DNA of 64,000 nt from Octopus sinensis (GCF_006345805.1 NC_043006.1:26908001-26972000); one strand, 5' to 3'. Positions 24,089-58,608 are shown, counted from the first letter of the stretch. Made by a program: numbers and translations. Notes: a model not told the origin generated them from the letters alone.

Positions 24089-24163
24089 AAGTTTAATGCA
24101 GGCTCTCTGTATGATATTGATTTAATGGCATTTCTTCGAGGACGTTTAACACTAAAGGTGTCC
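24089..24163 (-). CDS. SGO: Shugoshin exon 8, first half of SGO motif (DTFSVKRPRRNAIKSISYREPALN)
   Basis: Acceptor ttttatttatcag, donor gtaagt, 75 nt, phase 2 to 2. Matches the SGO motif consensus RR..Y.EP.L. Confidence 0.93.
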
Positions 24164-27532: not shown

Positions 27533-28998
27533 CTTTCCTTTCACTTTAGAGTGAACATCTTTTTTCATTTTTAAAATGTCATCAGCATTAATCAAATCAG
27601 GTGTCTTTTCGCTGAAATTTTCTTTGTCCGTCTTCTCTGGAACATTTCTATGTGATTTTCTAGATCGGGATCTGACATTTTTTGTACTAATTTCCTGTTC
27701 TAATTTGCTAAGTTTTCCTTTACTTAATCTGGATTGTCTTTTCTCTTTTGTGATTTTAGTTGATGATAATTCAGAAAGCATTTTTTCATCTGAATTACAG
27801 CAGTCTGTTCCTGAATTGGTACTACCTGCTTTAACAGAAGAAGCTGATCGTGATCTATGTTTGGATGAACTAATTCTAGCATTTTCTGCAGTTGAGTTGG
27901 TCAAAGATTCTCTCCGTATATGACTGCTTGATCTGCCTCTCATCCTTAAGGGTACATTAGTGGAAACGTCATCATCTTGTAAAGCTTTTCTATAGCGCTC
28001 AAGAATGTCACTGACGTTACTTGATTGTTTTAATGAGGATACAGTTCCTTTTTCTAAATTTTCATTTGGTTTAGAATGCTTTTGTGCTCTGTCTTTGTGC
28101 AATTCATTCATTGTTGATTTGCTGTTGGAGTTAGAAAGTTCAGAAGTTTTCCCCTTGGGACTTTGAGAAGGACTTGAAATCACCATCTCGGAATCTTGCT
28201 TTAAACTATTTTTATTGGTTATTTTAGAATTTTCAGATTGTTTCATGCCTCCATCAGTCTTATCAGAACCAACCAATTCTAATCTCGTAGTAGTCTTTTG
28301 ACAATTTTTATTAATTTCTGGTGTAGCTTGTGGTTTTATAACACTTGTATCAAAACTTTCATCAACTTCTGCATAACTAACAACTTTTGACCGTGTTCTG
28401 CGGGTAAGAGTTCTCACAGGAACATTAGTTTCACATGTAGATATATGTTTGCTTTCATAGTCTTCATCATCATCATCATCTATTTTTTTCCTTGAACGTG
28501 ACTTTTTTCTAGCAACAGGCTGATCTTTAGTTAATGATTTCTTAGACTGTGAAAGTTTTATCTTTTCTTCATTGCACTCATTAGAAATTCTGGATACAGT
28601 TTGGTTATCATTAATAATTTTGTCTGAATTATCTTTGACATCAGTAATCTCTTCTTTTTTCTTCTCTTTTGCCATGGCAACTCGCTCACGATATTGACCA
28701 AGACTTTGGCATTTACCAAATGTAGAATCATTCAAAGAAACATTATAAATGCCTTCATCTTTTACGTCTTTCTTATTTAACAATTGAGGAGTTTTGTCAT
28801 GGAAATCAAACAAAGATTTTGGTTCTTCCCTGTCTTTTTTCTCTTCGTTAATTTTCTTTTTTGATCTGACATTGGGTGCAGATGGTCGAAGACCAGAAAA
28901 TTTTTTCCTTGTCGCGGAAAAAACAATCTTCCCAGGTTTTGGTAACCTTAACTCAATAACAGTTTTATTTTCATTATCATCAGTTTCTTTGCATTTAT
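27533..28998 (-). CDS. SGO: Shugoshin exon 6, large K/S/E-rich exon containing FDF-x3-TP, RRTRSKVVSYAE and a KEN box
   Basis: Acceptor ttttttttttctttttag, donor gtaaat, 1,466 nt open frame (includes ORF 27518-28813), phase 1 to 0. Confidence 0.9.
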
Positions 28999-29352
28999 CT
29001 AAAAAGAAAAAAAAAAGAAAGTTTCTTAATTCAAATTGAAAATGGACCAGTTTGTTTATTTTAATAGAGAAACAATAGGAGAAAATACAAACAAACTAAG
29101 TTACCTTGAAGTACTCAGTTTTCAATTTCATTACTTTGAAGCATAATATTTAATTACATCAAATTCATATAAGCATTTCCTCAAATAGATTCTGTAAATT
29201 TGTGACTGTAGACCTGCATTTTGTTTTGTAGCAGAAATTACGAATTACCATGTCAGTGAATGTTTTCACCTAAGCAGCATTTTTATATTTTGCATCCTTT
29301 CATTTCATTATAGAAAGGCAGTGAAACAAATTAGAAAAAAAGAAATACACAC

Positions 29353-30051
29353 CTCTTTCATCTTCCTTTTTATCCTTTGAGCTCTTTGACGATTTTTTGT
29401 TGCCTTTTGCTTTTACTTTATTAGGTGCTACTGTTGGTTTAACAAAAGTTTCTTTAGCAACAGTCGTATCTTTTTGTTTCTCCAGATTTATATCAGATGG
29501 ATGAACATCATTACCAGTTGGTAGATTTTGTGATGACTCATGCATTACGTCAGTGTTGTTTATTATTTCAGTCAATTCCATGTCAACTTCACCAGTTATT
29601 GTAACGTTGGGTATGGCATTATTTAAACCATTATCAGCATCATTAACTATTAAGGCTGTTTCTGCAGCTTTACCATTTGGCATTGATGCATCAGTACAAG
29701 GAATATGGTTAGAGTTATTTTTAACTACTTTATCCCTGTCAGCTGCATTTTCCAAATTAACTTCTTCTGCACAAGAATCTTTAATAACTGACGGTTCTAA
29801 AATATCCAATTGTTGGTGACGCTTTTTGTCAAGACCTGTAGCAGACAAGTGTAATGAAGAGCGGCGCCTTTTTCGGGTAGTTGGGAGATTTGAACCAAAA
29901 TCGATTTCATCCAGAGATTCCCGTCTAAATTGAATACTGGAACGTCTTTCTACATCAGGGCGACTTTTAGTAGCAATTTTAGGTTTTTCAATGGGGACGT
30001 TTAAATGATTTTCGTCAGCATTTTTACACAATTTTTCAGATTCCAATTCAA
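29353..30051 (-). CDS. SGO: Shugoshin exon 5, downstream copy (5A), 699 nt
   Basis: Acceptor tcattttttag, donor gtgtgt, open frame (ORF track 29300-30046). Phase 1-1 joins exon 6 in frame. Confidence 0.85.
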
Positions 30052-30557
30052 CTAAAAAATGAATAGGAAAAGAAAAGAATTAGGTTTTACCTTTATCATA
30101 GAAAACAAAATTATGAAAAATAATAATTTATTACTAGCTGGACCCATGAAAAATTCATGGAAAACATAAAAAATGTAAGCATGTGTAAATTGTGTGCTGG
30201 TGCCATGAGAAATGTTTCTATATTGTGACGGTTACAGAATATAGAAAGAAGTGTAAAACCGATAACTATATAATCCAACCAAAATATTTCAGTTATGCAA
30301 ACATAAACAGAATTACTGTTTAACCTTAAAATACATTGTACATATTCAAAGAACCTTTGTGGTTTAGTGGTATGGAACGTTCCTGTGATATTCTTTTGTT
30401 CCTTTACTTGTTTGTCATTTGATGGTGGCCATGCTGGAGCACTACTCTTTAGTTGAAGAAATCGACCCCTGGACTTAATATTCCCTGTAAGCCTGGTGCT
30501 TATTCCATCAGTCTCTTCTGCTGAACATCTAAGTTATGAGGACACAGACACACACAC

Positions 30558-30599: not shown

Positions 30600-30603
<4 letters not shown>

Positions 30604-33022: not shown

Positions 33023-33424
33023 TTGAAGGATGATGACTGTGCACAGTTGATCGTGTTCAGACTTGGCAGAAAAAACTGGATTTTTTTGTTCACAGCACTG
33101 GATTCTGTGTCTGTGGACCAGATCGCCACGATGGCCGACAAGGTGTTGGAGTTTTCGCGCCCATCTCCCTCGCGGGGCCTGTACGCATGTACAGGGCCCC
33201 CTCCGACGAACGATAAACTAGCCGAGAACATCTATGCGCTTACGCGGAGAATCGATGATCTATGCCGTGCGATCGGGCGCCTATCTCGCAGTCGTAGTCG
33301 CTCTATTTCCCGTAGTCGGAGTGACTATGTTTCTCGTTCCAGCTGGTGCTGGTACCATTCGAAGTATGCTGAAAAGGCAGATCGGTGTACCCAGCCGTGC
33401 ACTTTCAAGCCCTCAGAAAACTAA
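33023..33424 (+). CDS. gag: Gag C-terminal part with CHCC motif (CsRn1 clade)
   Basis: CWYHSKYAEKADRCTQPC is C-X2-H-X9-C-X3-C. RS-rich segment precedes it. The Gag N-terminus is absent. Confidence 0.85.
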   Translation: MKDDDCAQLIVFRLGRKNWIFLFTALDSVSVDQIATMADKVLEFSRPSPSRGLYACTGPPPTNDKLAENIYALTRRIDDLCRAIGRLSRSRSRSISRSRSDYVSRSSWCWYHSKYAEKADRCTQPCTFKPSEN

Positions 33425-36400: not shown

Positions 36401-36703
36401 CATTTTGAGACGTCTTCATCTTTTGATGACAACCTTGACACACCCACCTATGCACCTTTAACAACACATTCACCTGCACAAACGCCTTCACCTGCACAAA
36501 CGCCTTCACCTGCACAGACACCTTCACCTGCACAGACGCCTTCACCTGCACAGACGCCTTCACCTGCACAGACGCCTTTGCCTTCACCGGCTCCTACAAC
36601 ACCACCCTCGCCGTCAACGGGTGCCCCGAGCACACCGTATGTTACAAAATCGGGCAGAACAGTGCATTGGCCCAAGAAACTTTCAAAGACAATCTACATT
36701 TAA
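33385..36703 (+). CDS. pol: Pol (protease, RT, RNase H, integrase) with a single frameshift near 34918
   Basis: MVDTGS protease; YVDD RT; DASD..IGAVL and YTDHKPL RNase H; HHCC zinc finger, DLVGP/TTDRGRQF/NGLVERFH integrase; GPF motif. ORFs 33385-34926 and 34898-36703. Confidence 0.95.
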
Positions 36704-36835
36704 CTTTCTTTCAAAAATTTTTCTTCTTGTATGATATTATGTACCAAGTCTTCTGGGGGATCGGCAAGCCTTCTGTTTTCTGCAGCACCACCACAAATTT
36801 TCTTGTTGTCGTACTTCGCACTCGGAGGGGAGCCT

Positions 36836-37240
36836 TATAGTGATGCTACTGTGTAGGGTTCAGCGCGCATGCGCAGAATGGGACTACTTCCGGGTGGCCA
36901 CCGGAAGTCTTCCCTCATGCGCATGTGCGGGAAACGTTCCCTCAAGCCCACCAAGCTCAAATCTTTCTCTCCGGCTCCACAGCTTGCCGCGATAGGACGT
37001 ACATTCAACGGCTCTGACAACCTCACTGATAGCCTCCATCGACCATCAACAAACTAACACGTAGCTGTATATCAGAGGCTGTCTTTCTCCCATCAGACAC
37101 GTACGACATCACAATAAATAAACGAACTGCTGTCTTTTTACCTTCAACCTGACTTCGTCTGTATTGTCTTATAAGATTATATGTGACTAGATCGGATATC
37201 GACACCTTTTCAGTGAATCGATAACAGATCCTTCGTTACA
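36836..37240 (+). mobile_element. 3' LTR (LTR-B, 405 bp) of the plus-strand CsRn1-clade element
   Basis: PPT ggaggggagc at 36824-36833. Starts TATAGTGAT (TG changed to TA), ends CGTTACA, contains AATAAA. Confidence 0.85.
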
Positions 37241-37385
37241 CCTTGTTTCCACACCTGAAACTTCTCCAGTTCTGATAGTGACTCAGCAATTAGAGCAAGG
37301 TCATCAGCATAGAGGAGCTCCTAGGGGCATCCTGTCTTGAATTCCTCCGTTATTGCCTGGAGGACTATGATAAATAGGAGAGGAC

Positions 37386-37433
<48 letters not shown>

Positions 37434-37444
37434 TATATATGTAC

Positions 37445-37475
<31 letters not shown>

Positions 37476-38615
37476 CATGCATATATATGTACCTTTTTCT
37501 TTCTCTATGCTACCCAAAAAAACATCGCCATTTTCCACCCGTTTCTCTTAAAGTACCTTCAATCCTTTAATTCGATCTTCACCATTCGCGGTGCCTTCAA
37601 ACCCAAAATTACCATTATTAGCCCCAACCAAACTTCCTTCTTCCCCAAACTCAGACTTCCGGTCAATCTATTTATATGCACCGTCTCTCCCCACTCCTAT
37701 CATTTCTTCTCCGATTCACAGCGATGTCTATAGCAAGCTAAGATTTCTCCCTTCTTTTTCATACATACATACATTTGCCTACCGTTTAAATGTTTTGAAC
37801 TTATACCACCAACAAGCTTTGCTTTCCTTTTTCTTTCTCTATGCTACCCCAAAAAACATCGCCATTTCCCGCCCGTTTCTCTAAAGTACCTTCAATCCTT
37901 TAATTCGATCTTCACCATTCGCGGTGCGCCCACCCTTTCCCACCCCCACCACCAATACCGGTGAACACTGTTCTCACTGTTCACACCATCTACACCGGAT
38001 ATGCCCTCCCCCACCACCATTATGTGTGTGTCTCTCCCTCCTACCACTCCTCCTCACATGCTTTCACTGTGTATTACCCCTCCACCACCACCAAGACAAG
38101 CAGCTAGCGCTGCAGCTCATCAACTGCCCCACCTATCCTACGTTTCCTCCTGTTATTGAATCTGTCACTGCCTCAACCGGCTATCTCCTTCCAGTCCCCT
38201 CCCCCACTCGTGATGTCCTACGTTTTATTTCCTACGAACCTGCATCAACCCTAGCTGTCATCGTTCCTCCTTACTCCAACCCTCCCCACTGGTGCTTCCC
38301 TATATTACCTGCACCCCCAAAAGCACCATCTGAACGTGGCCGATGCCAGCGCTGCCTTGGCTGGCTTCCGTGCCGCTGGCACGTTAAAAGCTCGAACCGA
38401 TCGTGACCGATGCCAGACCCACCCTGGCACCTGTGCAGGTGGCACGTAAAAAGCACCCACTACACTTGCGGAGTGGTTGGCGTTAGGAAGGGCATCCAGC
38501 TGTAGAAACTCTGCCAGATCAGACTGGAGCCCGGTGCAGCCTCCTGGCTTCCCAGACCCCGGTCAAACCGTCCAACCCGTGCTAGCGCGGAAAACGGACG
38601 TTAAACAATGATGAT

Positions 38616-38678
38616 ATGTGTGTGTGTATGTATATATATATATATACATGCATATATATGTACATATGTATGTGTGTG

Positions 38679-38719
<41 letters not shown>

Positions 38720-38776
38720 GCATATATATATATATATATATATACATGCATATATATGTACATATGTATGTGTGTG

Positions 38777-38813
<37 letters not shown>

Positions 38814-38885
38814 GCATATATATATATATATATATATATACATGCATATATATGTACATATGTATGTGTGTGTATGTATATATAT

Positions 38886-38944
<59 letters not shown>

Positions 38945-38973
38945 GCATATATATGTACATATGTGTGTGTATG
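38616..38973. repeat. Compound (TA)n/CATG/TGTG microsatellite array
   Basis: Visible directly. The same motif recurs at 37390-37490 and 41235-41380. Confidence 0.9.
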
Positions 38974-41230
38974 TCATCATCATCATTTAACGTCCGCTTT
39001 CCATGCTAGCATGGGTTGGACGGTTCAACTGGGGTCTGGGGAGCCCGAAGGCTGCACCAGGCCAGTCAGATCTGGCAGTGTTTCTACAGCTGGATGCCCT
39101 TCCTAACGCCAACCACTCCGAGAGTGTAGTGGGTGATTTTATGTGCCACCGACACAGGTGCCAGACGAGGCTGGCGAACGGTCACGCTCGGATGGTGTTT
39201 TTATGTGCCACCGACACAGGTGCCAGACGAAGCTGGCGAACGGCCACGCTCGGATGGTGTTTTTATGTGCCACCAACACAGGTGCCAGACGAAGCTGGCG
39301 AACGGCCACGCTCGGATGGTGTTTTTATGTGCCACCAACACAGGTGCCAGACAAGGCTGGCAGACGACCACGCTCGGATGGTGTTTTTATGTGCCACCGA
39401 CACAGGTGCCAGACGAGCCTGGCGAACGGCCACGCTCGGATGGTGTTTTTATGTGCCACCGACACAGGTGCCAGACAAGGCTAGCAGACGACCACGCTCG
39501 GATGGTGTTTTTTATGTGCCACCGACACAGGAGCCAGATTAGGCTGGCGATCGGCCACGATTGGATGGTGATTGTTACGTGCCCACAGCATGGAGGCCAG
39601 TCGGTGCGGTACTGGCTACGGCCACGTTCGGATGGTTTTCTTGTGTGCCACCGGCACTGGTACCACAAGGATACAAATTCCATTGATGTTCATCTATTTT
39701 GATTTTGTTTGATTTTCACCTGCCTCAACAGGTCTTCACAAGTATCACAAGAAGGAAGGTATGCACAGGTGGACTGACTACGTCCCAGGTAGGGGCCACG
39801 GGTTATGGCCTGACTAGTCTTGCCGGGTCTTCTCACACACAGCATACTTCCATAGGTCTCGGTCTCTAGTCATTTCCTTGGTGAGACCTAAACTTCGTAG
39901 GTCGTGCTTCACCACTTCGTCCCAGGTTTTCCTGGGTCTACCTCTTCCACAGGTTCCCTCAACTGCTAGGGTGTAGCACTTTTGCACACAACTATCTTCA
40001 GCCATTCTCGTCATATGACCATACCAGCGCAGCCGTCTCTCTTGCACACCACAACTGACGCTTCTTAGGTTCAACTTTTCTCTTAAGGTACTTACACTGA
40101 CGATTATGAACACTGATATTACACATCCATCGGAGCATACTGGCTTCATTTCTTGCGAGCTTACGCATATCCTCAGCAGTCACGGCCCATGTTTCACTAC
40201 CATGTAGCATGGCTGTACGTACACATGCATCATAAAGTCTGCCTTTTACTCTGAGCGAGAGGCCTTTTGTCACCAGCAGGGGTAAGAGCTCTCTAAACTT
40301 TGCCCAGGCTATTCTTACTCTAGCAGTTACACTTTCAGCACACCCACCCCCGCTACTAACTTGGTCTCCTAGGTAGCGGAAGCTATCAACTACTTCTAGT
40401 TTGTCTCCCTGGAACGTGGTAGAAGTTGGTCTCTGCACATTTCCAGTGTTTATTTCTCCTGAGCATCTGCCACATACGAAAACTATCTTCCCAGTTAGCC
40501 TACCTTTGACATTGCTGCACCTCTTATGTGTCCATAGCTTACACTTGGTGCACCTTATAGAGTTTCTACGTACACCTTTTTTACAGATCGAGCAGGGCCA
40601 TCTACCTGAAGTCGTTTGTGGTTGGTCCACCTTCCTACTTATTAGGACTTTGGTTTTGGCTAGGTTGACTCTAAGGCCCTTTGATTCTAATCCTTGTTTC
40701 CACACCTGAAACTTCTCCAGTTCTGATAGTGACTCAGCAATTAGAGCAAGGTCATCAGCATAGAGGAGCTCCCAGGGGCATCCTGTCTTAAATTCTTCCG
40801 TTATTGTCTGGAGGACTATGATAAATAGGAGGGGGCTGAGGACTGAACCTTGGTGGACCCCAACCTCTACCCGGAATTCTTCACTGTACTCGTTGCCAAC
40901 CCTCACCTTACTAGCTGCGTCTCTGTACATGGCTCGCACAGCTCTCACTAACCATTCATCTATCCCTAGTTTCCTCATTGACCACCAGATAAGGGATTGG
41001 GGGACCCTGTCAAAGGCTTTCTCCAAGTCAACAAAAGCCAGGTACAAGGGCTTACCTTTGGCTAGGTATTTCTCCTGCAGCTGTCTTACCAGGAATATAG
41101 CATCAGTAGTACTTTTCCCTGGCACGAACCCAAACTGCATATCATCTAAGCAAACTCTCTCTCTCTAATTAACTGGGCTATAACCCTCTCCGTAACCTTC
41201 ATTACCTGATCCAACAGCTTGATGCCCCTG
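38974..41230 (-). mobile_element. 5'-truncated RTE-clade LINE: RT ORF with PHD-like insert, long 3' UTR, (GAT)n tail
   Basis: QFGF.PG.STTDAIF, DLEKAFD, GVHQGS.LSP, LYADD, RYLG, RPRKTW. One frameshift near 40070. Confidence 0.92.
39137..39570. repeat. 62-bp tandem repeat, about 7 copies, inside the RTE 3' UTR
   Basis: atgtgcc recurs at 39141, 39203, 39265, 39327, 39389, 39451 and 39514. Confidence 0.9.
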
Positions 41231-41266
<36 letters not shown>

Positions 41267-44200
41267 GCATATATATGTACATATGTGTGTGTGTATGTAT
41301 ATATATATATATACATGCATATATATGTACATATGTGTGTGTATGTATATATATACATACACAATCATACATATGCATACATATTTATATACACCTATGT
41401 ATCTGCATACATATACAAATATATATATGCATGTGTGAATGTGTGCACACATGCATGTTTTAGATTGAAGTCAGTAAAATACATTATCCTATAATTAAAA
41501 AAGGAAATAAGGACTTGTATCATAAAGGGCAAGCATGGAAAAATGAACCAAAACAAAAGAAAAAGAAATGTAAGTATATAAAAAAATGTAAGTATATATA
41601 CAAATATATATCTACATATGATCATTCACATAACATTTATATATATATATATATTATATATATAATATATATATATATATATACACTGATATAGATATAT
41701 ATGATATCATCATCATCATCGTTTAAAGACCACTTTCCATGCTGGCATGGGTTGGATGGTTTGAGTGACGGCTGGCAAGCCAAGAGGTCGCACCAGGCTC
41801 CAATCCGATCTGGCAATGTTTCTACAGCTGGATGCCCTTTCTAATGCCAACCACTCTGAGAGTGCAGTGGGTGCTTTTCACATGCCACTGGCACAAGGGC
41901 CTGTCAGGCAGTACTGACATCAGCCATGCTTGAATGGTGCTTCTTATGTGCCACCGGAAAGGAAGCCAGTCAGGTGGCACTGGCAACAGCCACACTCGAA
42001 TGGTGCTTTTTACATGCCATTGGCACGGGACCAGTCAGGCGACACCAGCATCAACCACACTCGAATGGTGCTTTTTACATGCCACCAGCACAGGTGCCAA
42101 TCAGGTGGTACTGTCATCGAACAGAATGACGACTTCACTTGCCTCAACAGGTCTTTGCAAGTGCAGTTTATTCCCCAATGATTGAAGGGTACTCTTTGAT
42201 GGGCTGGTCATACTGCACTGGCATAGGCCACGGTTACGGTCTCACTAGGCTTGCCGAGTCTTCTCAAGCACAGCATATCTCCAAAGGTCTTAGTCAGTTG
42301 TCATCACCTCGGTGAAGCACAAAGTTTGATGATTGTGCTTCAAGTGAATGATAATATTTTGAAAACAAAAGTGTTTAATATTCAATTTCATATACATCTA
42401 TTTTGTGTGTGCGTGTGTGTGTGTGATAAACTAAACTGATAAACTAAATACAATTTACAATAAAACTCTGCAGTTTTATTTTGATTAAAATATCAGCTTT
42501 TTCAGAGCAAAACCATTGAATGCTGTTTGCCTGCCTTTTAGTGTCTCTGTCATTCACTGCCACTCCATTTACAGTTGTTTCCCTAGCATGGCCAATGAAA
42601 CACACATTGCGCTTTATTATATGTAAGATTAAATCAATAACATGGTCTACTGGGCTAAATTTAGGTGTGTAGGCATAGTACAGGAACAGGCAGGGTTATA
42701 TGGTTAAGAAACTTGCTTCCCAACCATGTGGTCTTGGGTTCAATCCCAATGTTTGACACCTTGGACAAGTGCCTTCTACTATAACCCCAGACCAACCAAA
42801 GCTTTGTGAGAGGATATGGTAGAATGGAAACTGAAAGAAGCCTATCGTCTGACAAATGTATCATTTTTACTACTTTTATGGCTGGGTACCCTCTCTAATG
42901 CCAACCCCTATAGTGTACTGGATGCTTTTTACATGACGCTGGCACTAGTGAAGTCACTAAGTAATTAAGACCCCTCAACTGAGTTGGATAGTAGGACTGA
43001 GGAAGTAGCTTTATATTAGGTGATGAGAAGTTAAATTAAGATAGGAATCAGAAACAGGTGTCTTTCTATAGGGGAGCTACATAGTTACCCTTGTTGGTCA
43101 AGAAAGAGAATGGTAATGAAGATGCTTCAGGGCATAACTTCAGATTACAGGAAGGTGAATAAAAGAGATATGGGCAGGTAAGTAAGTTTGTAGGAATGTA
43201 AGAAGTGAGTGGCAGATGGATAATGACGGGGATAGAGGGTAACTGCAGTGAGTGATGAACATGATGGAGGCATGGTCAATTGTGAATATTAGGTGGAAGG
43301 AATGTTGGAGGAAGTAAGTGTTGATCAGGAAGGTAATAGATGGCAGCAAAGAGGACATGAAATGGAGTGGGGTGCAAAAGTGATGCAAAGTGCCAGGGTA
43401 CAGAAAGGTGGAAATAGTAGGAGATAGAAAGAGGTAATGGGGTGGGTTTATTAACATTATTCTTTGAGCAAATAAGATCAGTATTTGAAAACACTGAAAA
43501 GAAATTTGTAACTAAATAAGCAGTGAGTGGCTTTTTAAAATTTAATTATCAGTTAATCTCATTTTACAGCATCACTTCAATTTTTCTAATAAACATTCTG
43601 CACAGCAAGCTTGTTGCTACACAGCTGGCTAGCAAAAGTAGACAATATTCTTCTACTGATGAAGCCTGATAACATTGGCCAGAGAAGAATGTTAGATAAA
43701 CCATATTTTTTTTCTCAATTGAACAGCTACAAATTTCATCTTACACTTCATTTTGACTCTTAATAGTTCTTATAATTTGACTGACATACTCTTTTCAGTA
43801 CAATCCCTTTATCCACAGAGCAACAGATGATGATACTGGTACTCCAGTCTTTATAATAATACTTTGTCTAATTTCATTAACTCAACAACAATTACTCAAA
43901 ACCCTGCAGCTTTCTGTCTTTTGTATCCTATTCACTGCCTGATATTTCAAGCATAACTTGTCGTATTTCATTCATGCTCTCCATATAGCAAAATAATTTA
44001 TAAATTACTGTGTAATTTATAAAAGCAACAAAATTGGCCATTTTCTCTGTTGCTGGGTACATCAAATGATGAAGTACCACAACAAGTGGTAACATGCTGA
44101 GATACATCCAACCCATGCTAGCATAGAGAGCTAGATGTAAAACGATCTGCTTATGTAAATATTTTTCTCACCAAGAGCCCTGTGCTGGTGGCATGTAAAA

Positions 44201-44431
44201 AGCACCCATGCCAGCACCATATAGTAGTGCCCATGCTGGCACCACATAAAAGCACCCATGCCAATGCCCCATAAGGAAGGATCCCAGCCATCTCTGTAAA
44301 ATGGTTGGCATTAGGAAGGGCATCCAACTGTAGAACTCAAACCACATCAAAGTGGAAACTGGTGCAGCTCTCCTGTCTGCCAACTCTGGTCAAACTGTCC
44401 AACCCATGCCAGCATGGAAAACAGACATTAA

Positions 44432-44651
44432 CCCTTTCATTACCAACCTGGCTGAAACCAGCTCTGGCTCTGAGTACAAATGTCTTGTTTTCATAAGTTT
44501 TGAATTAAAATTTTCCACCAAACCCTAGTCACAATTTATGCTCCTAACACTAGCTTAATGATAACTAAGTTATTTTACTAAATTCTTTGTTATATTTAAA
44601 GTAATTGAAAGAAACACAGGGCATCTTAAAATAAATACAGTAACAAAAGGG
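44432..44651. mobile_element. piggyBac-type MITE
   Basis: TTAA|CCCTTT...AAAGGG|TTAA. Confidence 0.8.
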
Positions 44652-44769
44652 TTAAATAATGACGATAGTGACTCTTCTGCAAAGTTTTCAAAAGCATAAA
44701 ACATTTGTTTATACAATACTTTTGGCAAATTTACTGTGAATATCTGGAGTATTTAAACATGGGATATTT

Positions 44770-44925
44770 TTAGAGTTAATCAAGTGTATTTGAAATAAAA
44801 ATCCAGCTTGATAAAAAAAAAAAACACAGCAAACAAGCTTAGACCATTAAAAATCTGGAGATATACATTTTTCTTCAAGACAACATCACCCATGATATTT
44901 TTATAGAGTAAAACCTCTTTTTTAG
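44770..44925 (-). pseudogene. Decayed duplicate of shugoshin exon 4 (pseudo-exon)
   Basis: Translates as KKEVLLYKNIMGDVVLKKNVYLQIFNGLSLFA versus exon 4 NEKVLLNKDAIGDVALKKNVNSQICDELSFIA. About 21 mismatches in 91 aligned nt. Acceptor and GT donor are missing, and a poly-T run shifts the frame. Confidence 0.8.
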
Positions 44926-45198
44926 TAAATTTGACATTGGAGAAATTTGAACTCAGACACTAAAGTCTTGGAATAAATGCTGCAAGACCTTCCATCAAAT
45001 GTTGTAATAAGTCTTAATTCCCCACCAATAGAATTAAAGCAATTTATTCTCACAGAGCACTACATTTTGTTTTGTAGCAGAAAATATGAATTACCATGTC
45101 AGTGAATGTTTTCACCTAAGCAGCATTTTTATATTTTGCATTCTTTCATTTCATTATAGAAGGGCAGTGAAACAAATTAGAAAAAAAGAAATACACAC

Positions 45199-45897
45199 CT
45201 CTTTCATCTTCCTTTTTATCCTTTGAGCTTTTTGACGATTTTTTGTTGCCTTTTGCTTTTACTTTATTAGGTGCTACTGTTGGTTTAACAAAAGTTTCTT
45301 TAGCAACAGTCGTATCTTTTTGTTTCTCCAGATTTATATCAGATGGATGAACATCATTACCAGTTGGTAGATTTTGTGATGACTCATGCATTACGTCAGT
45401 GTTGTTTATTATTTCAGTCAATTCCATGTCAACTTCACCAGTTATTGTAACGTTGGGTATGGCATTATTTAAACCATTATCAGCATCATTAACTATTAAG
45501 GCTGTTTCTGCAGCTTTACCATTTGGCATTGATGCATCAGTACAAGGAATATGTTTAGAGTTATTTTTAACTACTTTATCCCTGTCAGCAGCATTTTCCA
45601 AATTAACTTCTGCACAAGAATCTTTAATAACTGACGGTTCTAAAATATCCAATTGTTGGTGACGCTTTTTGTCAAGACCTGTAGCAGACAAGTGTAATGA
45701 AGAACGGCGCCTTTTTTGGGTAGTTGGGAGATTTGAACCAAAATCGATTTCATCCAGAGATTCCCGTCTAAATTGAATACTGGAACGTCTTTCTACATCA
45801 GGGCGACTTTTAGTAGCAATTTTAGGTTTTTCAATGGGGACGTTTAAATGATTTTCGTCAGCATTTTTACACAATTTTTCAGATTCCAATTCATCAA
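45199..45897 (-). CDS. SGO: Shugoshin exon 5, upstream copy (5B), 699 nt
   Basis: Acceptor tcattttttag, donor gtgtgt, open frame (ORF track 45146-45889), symmetric phase 1-1. Confidence 0.75.
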
Positions 45898-47174
45898 CTA
45901 AAAAATGAACAGGAAAAGAAAAGAATTAGTTTTTCTCTTTATCATGAAATAATGATAAATAACAATAAGCAAATATTACATAGAACAGAATTCTATTTTC
46001 CCCAGGGTCTTAATAATGTGTATCAACTTTAATTACAATTTTATCATAATTATTAATTTATCTCTGTACCATTGATTTGTTTTTTGATAATGTCAAGCAA
46101 AATGGAAACATCAAGAAAATAGACTTGAAAAATGTTTCATGAAAAACATTCATGATATCTCAATCAGTATAAAACAATAAAAAAAAGTCTGAAAAAGAAC
46201 ATTACTTTTAAAATGGAACATAAAGTACATAAGAAAGTTTATAAGAAAAATCTGTGTAACTGCATTTTGATCTCATAATCATTGGGATCATTTTACTTGG
46301 AAAAAATATTCGCTACCACCATCAAAAGATAGATAACATTCCATAACTGAATATAGAGATCATCTTTGATGTTACAAAGTTCTCTAAAAAAAATATTGCT
46401 AGTAGATTAGCTTCTGCTGTTCCTCCGCTATATCGAATGTTCATAAATGAAACGTTGTGATGCCAGGAAATGAGATTGGTTAATTGATAATCTAATTATA
46501 AAGGGGAACCAAATACATAAGTATTTCTTTTATTATAATAATGGGGGCCTCTGCAGTCAAAGCTGATCATTCATCTGCAAGCAGGGGTGAGGTTTTTTTT
46601 TATTATTATTATTATTTTTTTTATTCATCCATGTAACTCTTCCCACTCCAATACCACCAAGGTTGCCTAAGGGAAATGCTGCTGAGTTGGCTGATGCAGC
46701 TTGATACCCTTGCCACCACATGTGTTTCTACAGTGTACAGAACCAGAAAACGATATTGTAAGGCATCTTCTTTGACCTAGCAGTTTAACAATCCACCACT
46801 CTGAATTAATTTTTCTTTGTCATCCTTGCAAAATTGAAAGGCAAAATTAACATCATCATCTTTTAACATCCACTGTCCATGCTAGCATGGTTAGACAGGA
46901 CCTCATGAAATTTGAGCACAGAGTTGGGACAAATACCACAAGGCATTTTATTCAACACTAACAGCTGTACTATTTTGCCTTTCATTATACTTCTAATGTA
47001 TTAAAGTGGTGTCAGAAAAAAACCTCCGAAATTCTGTAATAGATTTTATATAACATTTTATCTCAATTTTTTTTTATTCAAATTACAGGCACATACAGTG
47101 AAAATTACTTAATTTTCACCATATACAATAAACTGTTAGTAATTTATAATTTCATCAGTTTGTCCTTGTTTTGT

Positions 47175-48181
47175 TTACATTTTCTGACTCAATTTAGGCT
47201 GTAGTGGAAATTTTGGTTGAAATGATATCCTTGGAGTTATGTCCATCCTGATTGGTTCAGGTGGCATCACTGACAGCAGTTCATCAGTTAGTTCATATGC
47301 CTTTTTCTTCAGATGCTTGAGGAATGAAAAATTGCATGAGATTTTATAGGAACCATGTTCTATTGTTACCAAATTCCTACTTTTCTAGACAACTATAAAT
47401 GGGCTTGCCTTGAAAGGTAGAGACAGTCTCTTCATTGCTGTATGAGCACACTGTTGTCCATGAGAAGTGAAGAATTTGGGTGCATCAGATCTGGTCTGCA
47501 TATGTTTATATTTTATCACTGTTCAGAGCATTATTCAAGGTTATGCAGGAATGTATTAAACAAAGAAGTTTTATAATGCATGACACCAAGTAGACTGACA
47601 TTCATCTTCCTCCTATTAAGGGCCTCGAAGAGGGACACTGGTTGCACTGTGGGGAGTTATCATGCATTAGTAAAGAAAGTAGGGTAAATCTGCCTTCCAG
47701 TTTTGGCCTTCCATCACATATATATATATATGGTTAGGGAGCTTGCTTCCTAGCTATATGGTTTCGGATTCAGTCCCACTGCGTGTCACTTTGGGCAGGT
47801 GTCTTCCACTATAGCCCCGAGCCAACTGAAGCTTTGTGATTGAATTCGGTAGGCAGGAGCTACTGCCGTGTGTGTATGTGTGCTTATAGCTGCTCAGTGC
47901 CTCTCCGAGATATATATATATATATGTATATATATATGTATATATATATGTATATATATATGTATATATATATGTATATATATATGTATATATATATGTA
48001 TGTATATATGTATGTATATATGTATGTATATATGTATGTATATATGTATGTATATATGTATGTATATATGTATGTGTGTGTGTATGTGTGTGTGTATGTG
48101 TGTGTGTATGTGTGTGTGTGTGTGTATGTGTGTGTGTATGTGTGTGTGTTGTGTGTGTGTGTATGTGTGTGTGTATGTGTG

Positions 48182-48220
<39 letters not shown>

Positions 48221-48830
48221 TATGTGTGTATGTGTGTATGTGTGTATGTATGTATGTATGTATGCTAATAAATGTGTTCATAGTTCTCAAGAAACATTCA
48301 ACTTTGCCATTAGCATCAGACTAGTGAGTGGTGGCCTTCCTGTGGTGAAACGTAGACTGATTAACAAAATCATGAAAATCTTGACCTTGGGAAGGAGGCT
48401 CTTTATCAATTTTGACAATTGCTGGTAAGTCTTGTCAGCAAATATGGAATTCAGACAAGGAGTGACAACTTTTGTTGACTTTGATGACTAGTAACACCAG
48501 CTACCTCTGATGTTACCAGTACCATTCCTGATCTCAGGACAAACTGAGAGAGAGAGTTGTGGCTGCTTCCTCTGATGTCACTTCAGCCACAACTGGAGCT
48601 AACTCCATTGTATGGAACATTGATAGTGCTTGTCTCCATAGTTGTAGCTATTACTTCATCAAGAACTTAATTCAGAAATAGTTATCTGGCAAAGCTTTAC
48701 ATATAGCCCTTGTGGAAAAACAGCTTTGCAAAATCTGTGCCAAGATTTCTCTATTGACATCATAAAATTCCCATGCTGCAGTCAACAAGTGCAGCTTTAT
48801 GCAAGAAGAGTCTGTTCTCCAAGACTAAGA
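47175..48830 (-). mobile_element. Highly degenerate Ty3/Gypsy integrase region, interrupted by a SINE and microsatellites (47700-48265)
   Basis: TPCLNSIFA..LPAIVKIDKEPPSQGQDFHDF...ANGKVECFLRTM resembles the integrase core ..D.GP.F....NG.VERF. Confidence 0.6.
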
Positions 48831-49169
48831 GAAAAGATAGACTTTGCAATAGCCAGTCTTTTTTGGCATAAAGTAATCAGTCAGTGAATGTTTTATCATG
48901 TTCAGCAGAAACATCAGCACTTCTCACACTGCAGAGTACCAACACCTCTCTCTCTCTCTTTACTCTTTTACTTGTTTCAGTCATTTGACTGGCCATGCTG
49001 GAGCACTACCTTTAGTCGAGCAACTCGACCCCGGGACTTATTCTTTTGTAAGCCCAGTACTTATTCTATTGGTCTCTTTTTGCCGAACCGCTAAGTAACG
49101 GGGACATAAACACACCAGCATCGGTTGTCAAGCAATGCTAGGGGGACAAACACAGACAGACACACACAA

Positions 49170-49265
<96 letters not shown>

Positions 49266-50208
49266 ATATACGACGAGCTTCTTTCAGTTTCCGTCTACCA
49301 AATCCACTCACAAGGCTTTGGTCGGCCTGAGGCTATAGTAGAAGACACTTGCCCAAGGTGCCACGCAGTGGGACTGAACCCGGAACCATGTGGTTGGTAA
49401 ACAAGCTACTTACCACACAGCCGCTCCTGCGCCTATGTCTATCATTTTTCTTTTACAGACACTAGTCACATATGGTGTTCATGGCAGATTTTCAAAATGT
49501 TCTATTCATTTTCACTATCTAGAGCCACTATTGTTGTACACAGAATGGAAGAAAGAGAAGCATTACAGCTGACATTGAAATCAACAAATAAAGAAGAAAA
49601 TTCTTTATAAGTCTTGTTGCCAAACATATTTCCTCCAGTTCATGAGAAACATATACCGATTTTTCAATCACATTTTAAAAGATAAAAACAAGATACATTA
49701 ACATGATTTTTAGTTTAACCTGGCTGTCACTCTCTCTAGTACAAATGCTGTTTTATGGTGCAATTGTAAACAATACTACTCTACACTACAAATGGAGAAA
49801 ATCAAACTTACATTTACATTAGAAGTAAATATAGTTCCATATCCTTGTACAACAAATTTCACCTTATACCTTTGTTTTGACTCTTAATAGTTCTAACCCC
49901 TTTAATCTCCCAGTAGCAGATAATGATAATGGTACTTCAGTCTTTGGCAATATCTTTTTGTGTAACTGCATTAACATTGCAACAAGAATTCCTCAAAACC
50001 AAATTACACACAACCACAATAAGCGGTGACATGCTCTGAGTCACATATATCCTATGCTAGCATAGAAAGCTGGGTGTAAAATGTGCTGATGTAAATATTT
50101 TTTACATGAAATTAGTTACATTTCTGTACTTCTCCAAAACATTTGTAATACAATATTTTTGGTAAATTTATCATAAATATTTGTAATATTTAAACATGTA
50201 ATATTTAC

Positions 50209-50366
50209 CTTTAGACAACACATCAAGTGTATTTGAAGTATAATCCGTATTAATAAAAGTCTCAGCAATGAAGCTGAGCTCATCACAAATCTGGGAATTA
50301 ACATTTTTCTTTAAAGCAACATCACCTATGGCATCTTTATTGAGCAAAACCTTTTCATTAGGGGTT
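50209..50366 (-). CDS. SGO: Shugoshin exon 4 (TPNEKVLLNKDAIGDVALKKNVNSQICDELSFIAETF...DVLSK)
   Basis: Acceptor ttttcttttgtatttag, donor gtaaat, 158 nt open frame. Phase 2 to 1 exactly bridges exon 3 and exon 5. Confidence 0.85.
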
Positions 50367-51989: not shown

Positions 51990-52367
51990 TATGTGTGTAT
52001 ACACACACAAGTCTGTTGAGTAATCTTGCTAGAACTTTTGCTGCAGTGGAAAGCAGGGTGATCCCTGGTAGTTTGAGCAGTCTGACTTTACACCTTTCTT
52101 TTTGTATGGTGTAATGATGACAGCATCGAGGAGAACTCATGGCAGCTTGTACTCTTCCCAGCATGCAACAAAGAGCTCATGGAGTTTAGCATGTAGGACA
52201 GGACCCCAACACTTCCATATCTCTTGAAGAAAGAGAAGCATTACAGCCGACATGTCGCATTAATGGTTTGATGGATCTTTTTCTCAAGCACAGCATAATG
52301 CTAAAGGTCTTGATCATTGCCTCCGTGAGGTCCAACACTCAAAACTAACTTGGCCATTTTGCCTCTG

Positions 52368-53166
52368 GGAGGCCCAATGCTCGAAAGGAACCCGTCCGGG
52401 AGGCCCAATGCTCGAAAGGAACCCGTCCGGGAGGCCCAATGCTCGAAAGGAACCCGTCCGGAGGCCCAATGCTCGAAAGGAACCCGTCCGGGAGGCCCAA
52501 TGCTCGAAAGGAACCCGTCCGGGAGGCCCAATGCTCGAAAGGAACCCGTCCGGGAGGCCCAATGCTCGAAAGGAACCCGTCCGGGAGGCCCAATGCTCGA
52601 AAGGAACCCGTCCGGGAGGCCCAATGCTCGAAAGGAACCCGTCCGGGAGGCCCAATGCTCGAAAGGAACCCGTCCGGGAGGCCCAATGCTCGAAAGGAAC
52701 CCGTCCGGGAGGCCCAATGCTCGAAAGGAACCCGTCCGGGAGGCCCAATGCTCGAAAGGAACTCGTCCGGGAGGCCCAATGCTCGAAAGGAACTCGTCCG
52801 GGAGGCCCAATGCTCGAAAGGAACTCGTCCGGGAGGCCCAATGCTCGAAAGGAGCTCGTCCGGGAGGCCCAATGCTCGAAGGAACCCGTCCGGAGGCCCA
52901 ATGCTCGAAAGGAGCTCGTCCGGGAGGCCCAATGCTCGAAAGGAGCTCGTCCGGGAGGCCCAATGCTCGAAAGGAGCTCGTCCGGGAGGCCCAATGCTCG
53001 AAAGGAGCTCGTCCGGGAGGCCCAATGCTCGAAAGGAGCTCGTCCGGGAGGCCCAATGCTCGAAAGGAACTCGTCCGGGAGGCCCAATGCTCAAAAGGAA
53101 CTCGTCCAGGAGGCCCAATGCTCAAAAGGAACTCGTCCGGGAGGCCCAATGCTCAAAAGGAACTCA
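52368..53166. repeat. GC-rich 31-bp minisatellite, about 26 copies
   Basis: Unit ggaggcccaatgctcgaaaggaacccgtccg. It explains the six repetitive ORFs in the track. Confidence 0.97.
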
Positions 53167-53237
53167 GCCACTTTACCTCCCTTTCTTTTAAGCATTAAAT
53201 TACCAAAATAATATTTACCAAAATAATATTTACTTAC

Positions 53238-57287: not shown

Positions 57288-58172
57288 CTGAAAATAAAAT
57301 AAATTTAGAAAATACTTCAATTATAAATATTTTTAAAGTTTTGAAACACTTTAAATTTATTTTAGTATAAAAAATATTAATAAACAATTCCACATATGTT
57401 TGTACCACCAACATTAGTAAAACAAAGAGTTCTCTTATACAAAAATGAGTAATCTTGTTTTAATTTGAATTTGTATAACTTTGGAAAGTGTAAATGAAAA
57501 AAATAATTTTTTAATGAAAAGAAATTACTCAAGGAAATCTATTGTCAATGATATCTTTCAATATAGTCAAGTGTAGAAGCCAGACATTAAAAGATGATAG
57601 ATTGTATCATTGAAAGTAAAAGTTTGTTGCCAGCAGTTTCATATTACTTAGATCTCATTAGCAATGCAGAAGAAAATATGTTATCATCATCATAACCATT
57701 TAACGTCAACTCTTCCATGATTGCATGGGTTGGACAAAATTTATTGAAGCAGATTTTCTACAGTCAGATGCCCTTTCTGTTACTTGTTACTAGGCAGGTT
57801 AATATTCTGCATGACCAGACAAGTTTTCATGGAAGATTGGAAATGAAATATACTGCTTCTATGGTGATGTAATTCATTTACAACTATCATATGAAGTCAA
57901 CACAAGAAGGCAGTAACACACACACATACATACATATATATATATAAATAAAGATCAATCAAATATAGTATCACTTCAGAACCAATGGACCTTGAAGTGA
58001 CATACAGAATTGAACTCTGATTATGTATATCAGAAAGAATATTTACAAGTTGAAACAATTTGGACTTTTACGGTTTATATAATTATTTATATAATATTAT
58101 GTTTGGAATTCAAACACATTACAGCATTTTAACTTATTTAAATGTATATATCTGCAAACAGAGGGCTATATC

Positions 58173-58403
58173 TATTTCTTTATTACCCACAAGGGGCTAA
58201 ACATAGAGAGGACAAACAAGGACAGACATAGGTATAAGTCGATTACATCGACCCCAGTGCGTAACCAGTACTTAATTTATCGACCCCGAAAGGATGAAAG
58301 GTAAAGTCGACCTCGGTGGAATTTGAACTCACAACGTAACGGCAGACGAAATACTGCAAAGCATTTCGCCCGACGTGCTAACATTTCTGCTACCTCGCCG
58401 CCT
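58173..58403 (-). mobile_element. tRNA-derived SINE with a 15-bp TSD (partial relative at 14820-14990)
   Basis: acagagggctatatc at 58158-58172 and 58404-58418. B-box gagttcaaattcc on the minus strand. Confidence 0.85.
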
Positions 58404-58608
58404 ACAGAGGGCTATATCATGAAGTATAAAGCATACATAATGCATGAGCACATAGATACAAACTAAAATAATTTTGAATTTCTTGTGTTACCAATAGTAA
58501 AAAATAGTTAATGTATAATACACACACATGCACATGTAAACATACATACACACACACACATGCCAAAAACACTACTTTTTACATTCAAATCTTGACCTTC
58601 ATACTTAC

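What the first reader, a model, noticed from the sequence alone, without database searches (positions are those of the whole stretch)
43730..50366. Hidden dead copy of exon 4 shows an old exon 4-5 duplication with strongly discordant divergence (selective silencing plus likely gene conversion)
44770-44925 is a decayed exon 4 (about 77% over 91 aligned nt). The intron after it (43730-44770, once SINE and MITE insertions are removed) still aligns with the intron after the real exon 4 (49850-50208). Transcript order is 4, 5B, pseudo-4, 5A, 6, as expected from one tandem duplication of the 4-5 block. Exon 4 (158 nt, phase 2 to 1) would shift the frame if repeated, and it has lost both splice sites. 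Exon 5 is frame-neutral and survives. Yet the exon 5 copies, including synonymous sites and 136 bp of intron flank (4 differences), are 97-99% identical. The homogeneous tract ends about where the duplication junction should be (near 45060). Purifying selection alone cannot explain identical silent sites, so recent gene conversion or a second event is implied.
Basis: partly seen in the sequence, partly recalled or inferred. Interest (0 to 1): 0.75.

Follow-up and report, generated by a model that had tools for sequence, protein, structure and literature searches.

The report
Duplicated exon kept identical by conversion
An octopus shugoshin-family gene carries an old internal duplication in which one copied exon has decayed into a relic, while the two copies of its 699-base neighbour have been repeatedly copied onto each other and stay almost identical; this is a clean example of a process that is already well known.

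Summary
On the minus strand the order is exon 4 (50366-50209), exon 5B (45897-45199), a decayed exon-4 copy "psi4" (44925-44770), exon 5A (30051-29353), then exon 6.

- **Old divergence:** psi4 and about 360 nt of its intron differ from exon 4 and its intron at 20.6% of aligned sites (K2P 0.20-0.31).
- **Young divergence:** the exon-5 copies differ at 5 of 696 sites, and their 139-nt 3' flanks at 5 sites.

That species has the same order, the same psi4 and the same junction, so the duplication predates the species split by about 3.5-5 fold.

- **Inside the tract:** 38 substitution sites plus 48-nt and 3-nt indels are shared by the two paralogues within a species and differ between species. None follows orthology.
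- **In the flanks and in psi4:** the pattern reverses (12:0, 29:1, 37:0).

This is concerted evolution by gene conversion. Both lineages appear to have converted independently; the O. bimaculoides half rests on an assembly with gaps.

- **Refinements:** a 3'-truncated SINE head abuts psi4, which has no detectable acceptor in either species. It may therefore never have been spliceable.
- **Open:** whether both exon-5 copies enter the mRNA. The two O. bimaculoides annotations each use only one copy.

It is a new member of a known kind.

The parts
50209..50366 (-). Functional 'exon 4' (158 nt, phase 2 to 1), the parent of psi4
   Evidence: AG/GT intact. The translation matches O. bimaculoides XP_052826535.1 residues 208-257 at 92%.
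49852..50208 (-). First 357 nt of the intron after exon 4. It is the old paralogue of the intron after psi4.
   Evidence: Collinear BLAST blocks. Identity is 80-83% after gapped alignment.
45898..45979 (-). 5' intron flank of exon 5B. It is old homology to 30052-30134 and has not been converted.
   Evidence: 9 mismatches in 76 sites plus 2 indels. In the 49-column distal part, 12 sites follow orthology and 0 follow the species pattern. In the 28-column proximal part, 1 site follows orthology and 0 the species pattern.
45199..45897 (-). Exon 5B (699 nt, 233 codons, frame-neutral, open frame, intact AG/GT)
45060..45851 (-). Concerted-evolution (conversion) tract, B copy. It runs from about exon nt 47 to 139 nt into the downstream intron.
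   Evidence: Every informative site here is shared by the paralogues within a species (38 substitutions plus 48-nt and 3-nt indels); none follows orthology. The pattern switches at 45894-45851 and at 45063-45057.
45033..45059 (-). 27 nt of unassigned sequence at the duplication junction
   Evidence: No significant match to the rest of intron 5 or to the sequence upstream of exon 4. It is orthologous in O. bimaculoides.
44926..45032 (-). 3'-truncated, CpG-decayed head of a tRNA-like SINE, directly abutting psi4
   Evidence: It matches the first ~108 nt of the full SINE at 58403-58170 (z=10.3; 0 of 1000 shuffles reach the score). It is present at the same place in O. bimaculoides.
44770..44925 (-). 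psi4, the decayed copy of exon 4. It has no acceptor, its GT donor is deleted and its frame is broken.
   Evidence: 75.2% over 149 nt, z=35.6. tblastn to residues 212-248 at 51%. Against exon 4 in two species, 37 sites follow orthology and 0 the species pattern.
43729..44769 (-). Intron after psi4, the old paralogue of 49852-50208, interrupted by insertions
   Evidence: The insertions are the MITE at 44432-44651 and a SINE-like repeat at about 44302-44431.
30052..30134 (-). 5' intron flank of exon 5A (old homology, not converted)
29353..30051 (-). Exon 5A (699 nt, open frame, intact AG/GT)
29214..29352 (-). 3' intron flank of exon 5A, inside the converted tract
   Evidence: 5 differences from 45060-45198. 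8 sites follow the species pattern and 0 follow orthology.
27533..28998 (-). Exon 6 (489 codons). It joins in frame to either exon-5 copy.
   Evidence: 84% identical to the O. bimaculoides protein.
24089..24163 (-). Exon carrying the first part of the shugoshin C-terminal motif, which is completed by exon 19456-19398
   Evidence: Pfam Shugoshin_C scores 24.1 bits against a cut-off of 23.3.

Best explanation
**The duplication (inferred from anatomy and shared by two species).** An ancestor of this Octopus species and O. bimaculoides duplicated a block of a shugoshin-family gene in tandem. The block ran from the first few nucleotides of 'exon 4' to about 139-166 nt into the intron after 'exon 5'. 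The junction is filled by 27 nt of unknown origin and a 108-nt, 3'-truncated SINE head.

**The dead exon-4 copy (shown).** psi4 has no acceptor site at any detectable stage and lost its GT donor through a small deletion. It has since drifted neutrally.

**The exon-5 copies (pattern shown, molecular mechanism inferred).**
- Exon 5 is frame-neutral at 699 nt. Both copies keep open frames and intact splice sites.
- From about nt 47 of the exon to the end of paralogous homology, the two copies have been repeatedly overwritten by each other through non-crossover gene conversion. This appears to have happened independently in each species lineage.
- They therefore evolve in concert, while the sequence around them records the true age of the duplication.

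**Why the tract ends where it does (inferred).** The 3' limit is where homology ends. The 5' limit is probably held in place because the upstream intron is already too diverged, and too full of indels, to pair.

**Not shown.** Whether both copies are spliced into one mRNA, which would give a tandem 233-residue repeat.
For: **Shared ancestry of the arrangement**
- O. bimaculoides has the order 4, 5B, SINE head plus psi4, 5A, 6, with orthologous flanks at 87-92% identity.

**Site patterns in the four-way alignment**
- Exon part 1: 15 species-pattern sites, 0 orthology.
- Exon part 2: 15 to 0.
- 3' flank: 8 to 0.
- A 48-nt indel and a 3-nt indel are also shared by both paralogues within a species.
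- Distal 5' flank: 0 to 12. The TGA indel at exon nt 3-5 is copy-specific in both species.
- Beyond the 3' end: 1 to 29.
- Fisher test of 38:0 against 0:12 gives p=8e-12. The patterns do not interleave anywhere.

**Relative ages**
- psi4 against exon 4: 37 orthology sites, 0 species-pattern sites.
- K2P is 0.27-0.30 between the paralogues and 0.079 between orthologous psi4 copies.
- The duplication is therefore about 3.5-5 times older than the species split.

**Paralogue distances within a species are below the between-species distance**
- Window species: 5/696 in the exon and 5/139 in the flank.
- O. bimaculoides: 12/331, 0/282 and 8/137.
- Between species: about 5.5-13%.

**Silent and intronic sites are homogenised too**
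- pS is 0.020, and the flank differs by 3.6%, against 20.6% in the old blocks.

**The intervening sequence survived**
- psi4, the SINE head and the intron between the copies are retained orthologously. This rules out cycles of unequal crossover.
Against: - Only two species were compared, and there is no close outgroup. Substitutions cannot be polarised, so the donor copy is unknown.
- The O. bimaculoides assembly has gaps inside both exon-5 copies: 10 N in 5B and 218 N in 5A. The 0/282 figure for the second half could partly reflect assembly collapse. The window-species result does not depend on it.
- Between the first 357 nt and the last 82 nt of the duplicated intron, no paralogous similarity survives. 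A single contiguous tandem block is therefore inferred, not seen end to end.
- There is no transcript evidence that both copies are used.
Confidence: 0.88

Rival explanations
1. Two independent events: an old duplication that left psi4, and a recent separate copy of exon 5 inserted about 15.8 kb away.
For: Within the window alone this fits. The young tract is only 913 bp, and no detectable paralogous similarity lies beyond about 82 nt upstream or beyond 45060 downstream.
Against: - Both exon-5 copies, each with its own orthologous flanks, exist in O. bimaculoides. Both copies are therefore older than the species split.
- They are nevertheless far more alike within a species than between species.
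- The distal 5' flank is at the old divergence level and follows orthology, 12 sites to 0.
Confidence: 0.02
2. Homogenisation by repeated unequal crossing-over (loss and re-duplication) between the two exon-5 copies, not by non-crossover conversion.
For: Direct repeats 15.8 kb apart can recombine unequally, and the resulting sequence identity would look the same.
Against: - A crossover between 5B and 5A deletes or re-creates everything between them.
- psi4, the SINE head, the intron after psi4 and the repeat upstream of 5A are all retained as orthologues at ordinary between-species divergence.
Confidence: 0.05
3. Extreme purifying selection on the DNA or RNA sequence of both copies, for example to preserve structures needed for cephalopod RNA editing, keeps them alike without any exchange.
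For: The exon differs less than its 3' flank (5/696 against 5/139, p=0.015). Some constraint therefore acts on the exon.
Against: - Selection cannot make both paralogues share the same 38 species-specific substitutions and a 48-nt indel.
- The exon is weakly constrained between species: 22 non-synonymous and 9 synonymous fixed differences.
- The intron flank and the synonymous sites are homogenised as well.
Confidence: 0.02
4. Assembly artefact: one exon-5 copy is a misplaced allelic or collapsed sequence.
For: The O. bimaculoides assembly has N gaps inside both copies, which shows that the repeat is hard to assemble.
Against: - The window has no N at all.
- Each copy has unique flanks that are conserved in an independently assembled second species.
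- The copies carry copy-specific differences that both species share, such as the TGA indel and the 5' flank.
Confidence: 0.02

Closest known systems
Gene conversion between duplicate exons 26a and 26b of salamander Nav1.4 (Gendreau et al. 2021, PMC8476164)
   Same: An exon duplicated within one gene persists across species and is homogenised by non-allelic gene conversion. In both cases the conversion was detected from paralogues that share lineage-specific changes.
   Different: - There the copies are alternatively used terminal exons with transcript evidence, and the detected conversion tracts are short (56-77 bp).
- Here the exon is internal and about 790-840 bp is homogenised, intron included.
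- Here a dead companion exon dates the duplication.
- Here the use of the copies in mRNA is unknown.
Recurrent tandem exon duplications in plant CENP-C (Talbert, Bryson and Henikoff 2004, PMC549713)
   Same: A fast-evolving chromosome-segregation protein gains in-frame tandem exon duplicates. Duplication, loss and possible conversion occur among the copies.
   Different: - CENP-C is a different protein, and there exon pairs are duplicated and retained as diverging copies.
- In that paper conversion was only suggested.
- Here one exon of the pair is dead, and conversion is demonstrated by site patterns.
Long-lasting concerted evolution of duplicated genes by interlocus gene conversion (for example PMC2720389; reviews PMC3966226, PMC3924837)
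   Same: The diagnostic is the same. A bounded stretch is more alike between paralogues than between orthologues, and it is flanked by sequence that shows the true age.
   Different: Those cases concern whole-gene duplicates. Here both partners are exons of one transcription unit, 15.8 kb apart.
Rapid repeat turnover of MELT-motif arrays in the kinetochore scaffold KNL1 (Tromer et al. 2015, PMC4558858)
   Same: Modules of a chromosome-segregation protein that carry short motifs are duplicated and homogenised within lineages. Exon 5 contains a conserved 'DMELTE[IV]IN' stretch.
   Different: - KNL1 arrays are many short repeats inside exons.
- Here the repeat is a single two-copy, 233-residue, exon-sized unit.
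- The resemblance to a MELT motif rests on sequence only and is untested.

Membership tests
Concerted evolution by non-allelic gene conversion | The duplicates predate the species split: orthologous copies with orthologous flanks exist in both species. | tested here: met
   L002 carries 5B, psi4 and 5A in the same order with flanks at 87-92% identity.
Concerted evolution by non-allelic gene conversion | Within a bounded tract, paralogues are more alike within a species than orthologues are between species. | tested here: met
   38 species-pattern sites and 0 orthology sites, plus shared 48-nt and 3-nt indels.
Concerted evolution by non-allelic gene conversion | Flanking paralogous sequence shows the opposite (orthology) pattern and the older divergence. 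| tested here: met
   5' flank 12:0. psi4/exon 4 37:0, with K2P of 0.28 against 0.079.
Concerted evolution by non-allelic gene conversion | Silent and non-coding sites are homogenised too, which excludes protein-level selection. | tested here: met
   pS is 0.020. The 3' intron flank differs at 5 of 139 sites, against 20.6% in the old blocks.
Concerted evolution by non-allelic gene conversion | Shared polymorphism or patchy tracts between the paralogues in population samples | not testable with these tools
   No population data were available.
In-frame tandem exon duplication expressed in the protein | Two homologous exons lie in the same orientation, with the same phase, open frames and intact splice sites. 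| tested here: met
   Both copies are 699 nt and phase 1 to 1, with AG/GT intact and no stop codon in either species outside the N gaps.
In-frame tandem exon duplication expressed in the protein | Both copies are present in the mature mRNA. | not testable with these tools
   The RefSeq model XP_052826535.1 uses 5B only. The older UniProt model uses 5A only. 5A is broken by an N gap in that assembly.
Mutually exclusive alternative exons | The copies never co-occur in a transcript and encode distinct variants. | not testable with these tools
   No transcript data. The copies differ by only 2 residues and 2 single-residue indels, so exclusive use would yield almost the same protein.
Shugoshin family | C-terminal basic SGO motif (Pfam PF07557) | tested here: met
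   24.1 bits against a cut-off of 23.3 on the spliced window exons. 21.4 bits on the O. bimaculoides protein, which is just under the cut-off.
Shugoshin family | N-terminal coiled coil (Pfam PF07558, the PP2A-binding region) | tested here: inconclusive
   The exon at 57287-57079 encodes 'NNKALAHALQVARQDL...', which resembles the coiled coil from memory. Pfam and PDB sequence searches gave no hit.

The most novel reading that the evidence does not exclude
Both exon-5 copies are spliced into the mRNA. Octopus shugoshin would then carry a tandem 233-residue module, doubling two short motifs that are conserved even in a distant cephalopod: 'RRxSxDEIDFG' and the MELT-like 'DMELTE[IV]IN'. On this reading, selection for motif dosage in a fast-evolving centromere-protection protein favours continued homogenisation, in parallel with KNL1 MELT arrays and CENP-C exon duplications. 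The duplication would also have been viable from the start, because its breakpoint removed the acceptor of the frame-shifting exon-4 copy.
Probability: 0.2. Interest if true: 0.55.

Novelty: new member of a known kind. Interest (0 to 1): 0.35.

Why it matters
**As a worked example.** This is a tidy natural demonstration of gene conversion between exons of one gene.
- The dead exon-4 copy and the unconverted intron flank act as an internal clock. They show that the duplication is several times older than the exon-5 copies appear to be.
- A second species shows the homogenisation continuing after the split, apparently in both lineages.

**For annotation.**
- Dating exon or gene duplicates from their own divergence would be wrong here by roughly an order of magnitude.
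- Near-identical exon repeats break short-read assemblies. Both O. bimaculoides copies contain N gaps.
- They also lead gene models to keep only one copy. RefSeq uses 5B and the older UniProt model uses 5A.

**For biology.** If both copies are expressed, a segregation protein has doubled a conserved motif-bearing module. That would be worth a look in the context of rapid evolution of centromere proteins.

No new mechanism is implied.

Tried and rejected
**Searches that found nothing useful**
- A protein search with exon 4 plus 5B found nothing. This was a miss by the word index, because the exon-6 query later found the O. bimaculoides orthologue.
- Pfam and PDB searches on single exons, including the N-terminal coiled coil, gave no hits.
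- An exact look-up of P0001 found no contig.
- A literature search for shugoshin plus octopus found nothing relevant.

**Tests of where the 134-nt spacer came from**
- Against the remainder of intron 5: z=-0.5. Against the sequence upstream of exon 4: z=-0.7. Both rejected.
- An anchored test of the first 35 nt beyond the tract against copy A was not significant (159 of 2000 shuffles).
- The SINE is absent from copy A's intron and from upstream of exon 4. SINE-SINE recombination as the cause of the duplication is therefore not supported.

**Looking for more paralogous homology**
- None was found further upstream of the exon-5 copies.
- The repeat at 48959-49115 and 30395-30553 was considered as an extra old anchor. 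I rejected it because a third copy at 10444-10843 is unequally distant from the two.

**Tests of constraint on the two copies**
- dN/dS between 5A and 5B is 0.18, based on only 5 changes (p=0.07).
- Copy-specific changes across both species show no clear difference between 5A and 5B.
- Function of both copies cannot be inferred from this, especially since conversion itself would keep repairing a dead copy.

**The distant cephalopod contig L001**
- It shows one exon-5 orthologue within 10 kb upstream of exon 6.
- It is too diverged, and too short upstream, to serve as an outgroup.

Full report
**1. What is in the window**

The gene lies on the minus strand.
- Two 699-nt exons with open frames and identical splice signals lie at 45897-45199 (5B) and 30051-29353 (5A).
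- Exon 6 starts at 28998 and joins in frame to either copy.

Self-BLAST shows only one long, young repeat in the window. 29214-30126 matches 45060-45968 at 96.8% over 916 columns.

A collinear series of weak matches links 43729-44925 to 49852-50361. The strongest is E=4e-31.

**2. The old blocks**
- psi4 (44925-44770) aligns to exon 4 at 75.2% over 149 nt, z=35.6 against shuffles.
- Three intron blocks downstream of psi4 align to the first 357 nt of the intron after exon 4 at 80-83%.
- In total there are 96 mismatches in 465 aligned sites, with K2P of 0.20-0.31 and many indels.

The interruptions are genuine insertions.
- A 220-nt MITE (44432-44651) has 16-nt inverted ends and a TTAA target duplication. 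Another copy lies at 12421-12630.
- A SINE-like repeat at about 44302-44431 has several other copies in the window.

psi4 has no AG at the homologous position. It also has a small deletion that removes the GT donor.

**3. The young tract**
- 5A and 5B differ by 5 substitutions (3 synonymous, 2 not; pS 0.020, pN 0.0037) and two in-frame 3-nt indels.
- The 139-nt 3' flank has 5 differences and no indel.
- The 82-nt 5' flank has 9 mismatches in 76 sites and two indels. Its distal ~50 nt is at the old divergence level.
- Similarity ends abruptly at 45060/29214.
- The discordance is not chance. Old blocks against exon 5 give p=1e-34, and against the 3' flank p=2e-7.

**4. The junction**

The 134 nt between the tract end and psi4 matches neither the rest of intron 5 nor the sequence upstream of exon 4.

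Instead, 45032-44926 matches the first ~108 nt of a tRNA-like SINE.
- A complete copy of that SINE, with a 12-nt target duplication, lies at 58403-58170 (z=10.3).
- Many of the differences visible in the alignment sit where the full copy has CpG. This fits an old, decayed copy.
- The fragment is truncated at its 3' end exactly where homology to exon 4 begins, about 5 nt inside the exon.
- The SINE is absent from copy A's intron and from upstream of exon 4.

I read this in one of two ways. Either the SINE piece was captured as filler at the duplication junction, with the left breakpoint in the first nucleotides of exon 4. Or it is a later insertion followed by a deletion. Under either reading there is no evidence that psi4 ever had an acceptor.

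**5. Gene identity**
- The exons at 24163-24089 and 19456-19398 encode 'KRPRRNAIKSISYREPALNLKLRQGD'.
- This matches Pfam Shugoshin_C at 24.1 bits against a cut-off of 23.3.
- An upstream exon (57287-57079) encodes a coiled-coil-like 'NNKALAHALQVARQDL'. It recalls the shugoshin N-terminus, but Pfam and PDB searches gave nothing.

**6. Bringing in a second species**

A protein search with exon 6 found an 84%-identical protein. Its cluster includes XP_052826535.1, 'uncharacterized protein LOC106875105 [Octopus bimaculoides]'.

Its genomic locus, L002, is CM046609.1:33436449-33502224. It has the same order:

| Feature | L002 coordinates |
|---|---|
| exon 4 | 29558-29713 |
| exon 5B | 33393-34187 |
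| SINE head and psi4 | about 34466-34582 |
| exon 5A | about 36047-36954 |
| exon 6 | 37513 onwards |

- psi4 there has the same missing acceptor, the same abutting SINE head and the same donor deletion.
- The MITE is absent, leaving a clean single TTAA. It therefore inserted after the split.
- Mapping the O. bimaculoides protein onto the window gives this exon map, all on the minus strand: 58729-58609, 57287-57079, 53413-53238, 50366-50209, 5B, 5A, 28998-27533, 27326-27190, 24163-24089, 19456-19398, 12915-12857.

**7. The decisive test**

I aligned win5A, win5B, bim5A and bim5B and classified each informative site. A 'species' site is one where the paralogues agree within a species and differ between species. 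An 'orthology' site is one where the same copy agrees across species.

| Segment | Species pattern | Orthology pattern |
|---|---|---|
| Distal 5' flank | 0 | 12 |
| Exon part 1 | 15 | 0 |
| Exon part 2 | 15 | 0 |
| 3' flank | 8 | 0 |
| Beyond 45057 | 1 | 29 |

- The TGA indel at exon nt 3-5 is specific to 5B in both species.
- A 48-nt indel and a 3-nt indel are each shared by both paralogues of one species.
- The patterns never interleave. Fisher's test of 38:0 against 0:12 gives p=8e-12.
- For psi4 against exon 4 there are 37 orthology sites and 0 species-pattern sites.
- K2P is 0.27-0.30 between the paralogues, 0.079 between orthologous psi4 copies and 0.038 between orthologous exon 4.

The duplication is therefore about 3.5-5 times older than the species split.

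Paralogue distances inside the tract are below the between-species distance of 5.5-13%.
- Window species: 5/696 and 5/139.
- O. bimaculoides: 12/331, 0/282 and 8/137.

Both lineages therefore appear to have homogenised after the split. The heterogeneity in O. bimaculoides suggests more than one event there. One caution applies: that assembly has N gaps inside both copies.

**8. Mechanism**

*Shown*
- An old duplication shared by two species.
- A dead exon-4 copy.
- A bounded tract evolving in concert, surrounded by sequence evolving by descent.
- Retention of everything between the copies.

*Inferred*
- The homogenising process is non-crossover gene conversion. Crossovers between direct repeats would delete or regenerate psi4 and the intervening intron.
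- The 3' boundary is the end of homology at the junction.
- The 5' boundary is probably maintained because the upstream intron is too diverged to pair.

*Not shown*
- Whether both copies are expressed. RefSeq uses 5B only, and the older UniProt model uses 5A only.
- Constraint tests are underpowered. Conversion itself would keep a silent copy intact.

**9. Rivals**
- A second independent duplication is refuted by orthologous 5A and 5B.
- Sequence-level selection cannot create species-specific changes that both paralogues share.
- An assembly artefact is contradicted by unique flanks that are conserved in an independent assembly.
- Unequal crossover is contradicted by the retained intervening sequence.

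**10. Comparison with known cases**

The signature is the textbook one for concerted evolution (PMC2720389, PMC3966226).
- Conversion between duplicated exons of one gene is documented for Nav1.4 exons 26a and 26b in salamanders (PMC8476164).
- Recurrent exon duplication in a centromere protein is documented for plant CENP-C (PMC549713).
- KNL1 shows repeat turnover of its MELT-like motif arrays (PMC4558858, listed; abstract only read).
- No paper on this octopus gene was found.

**Verdict.** It is a well-marked new example of a known process and is of moderate interest.

Noticed in passing
window 58158-58415 (minus strand): A complete ~234-nt tRNA-like SINE (58403-58170) flanked by a perfect 12-nt target-site duplication, ATAGCCCTCTGT. 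It lies in the intron upstream of the coiled-coil exon. It is the family whose truncated head forms the duplication junction.
   Followed up: partly
window 44428-44655; L002 about 34715-34726: A MITE of the piggyBac type (TTAA duplication, ends CCCTTT...AAAGGG). It is present in the window species but absent from the orthologous O. bimaculoides site, which keeps a single TTAA. It therefore inserted after the species split. A second copy lies at 12421-12630.
   Followed up: yes
window 30135-43728: The intron between psi4 and exon 5A is about 14.7 kb and full of mobile elements. They include an LTR-retrotransposon pol (RT, RNase H, integrase) at 33373-36700 on the plus strand, another reverse transcriptase at 40001-41164 on the minus strand, and an integrase fragment at 31150-31632. 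The corresponding O. bimaculoides interval is under 2 kb as assembled, but it contains a 100-N gap of unknown true size.
   Followed up: partly
L002 37096-37126: Exactly at the 3' end of the converted tract, O. bimaculoides 5A has an extra ~27 nt. It forms a perfect 10-bp inverted repeat with the following sequence (GTAGACCTGC ... GCAGGTCTAC). It may be a footprint of break repair at the tract boundary.
   Followed up: no
L002 33932-33941 and 36438-36655; proteins P0001, P0003, P0004: The two O. bimaculoides gene models disagree because of the repeat. RefSeq XP_052826535.1 joins exon 4 to 5B to exon 6. The older model (UPI00071C1EEC, A0A0L8GSC6) starts in 5A and bridges an N gap. Both exon-5 copies contain assembly gaps. 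The gene is annotated only as 'uncharacterized', although it carries a shugoshin C-terminal motif.
   Followed up: partly
window exon 5 copies; L001 4756-5619: Two short motifs in exon 5 are conserved in a distant cephalopod whose exon 6 is 44% identical: 'RR(E/Q)S(L/M)DEIDFG' and '(V/I)DMELTE(I/V)IN'. The second resembles a MELT motif. That contig shows only one exon-5 orthologue within 10 kb upstream of exon 6.
   Followed up: partly
window 52264-53208 and 39132-39670: Long tandem arrays with a period of about 62 nt. One (93-96% identity between units) lies in the intron upstream of exon 4. The other lies within SINE-like tails in the psi4-5A intron.
   Followed up: no
The word-indexed protein search missed the O. 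bimaculoides orthologue when queried with exon 4 plus 5B, although long identical stretches exist. It found the orthologue with exon 6. A negative result from that tool is not reliable evidence of absence.
   Followed up: yes
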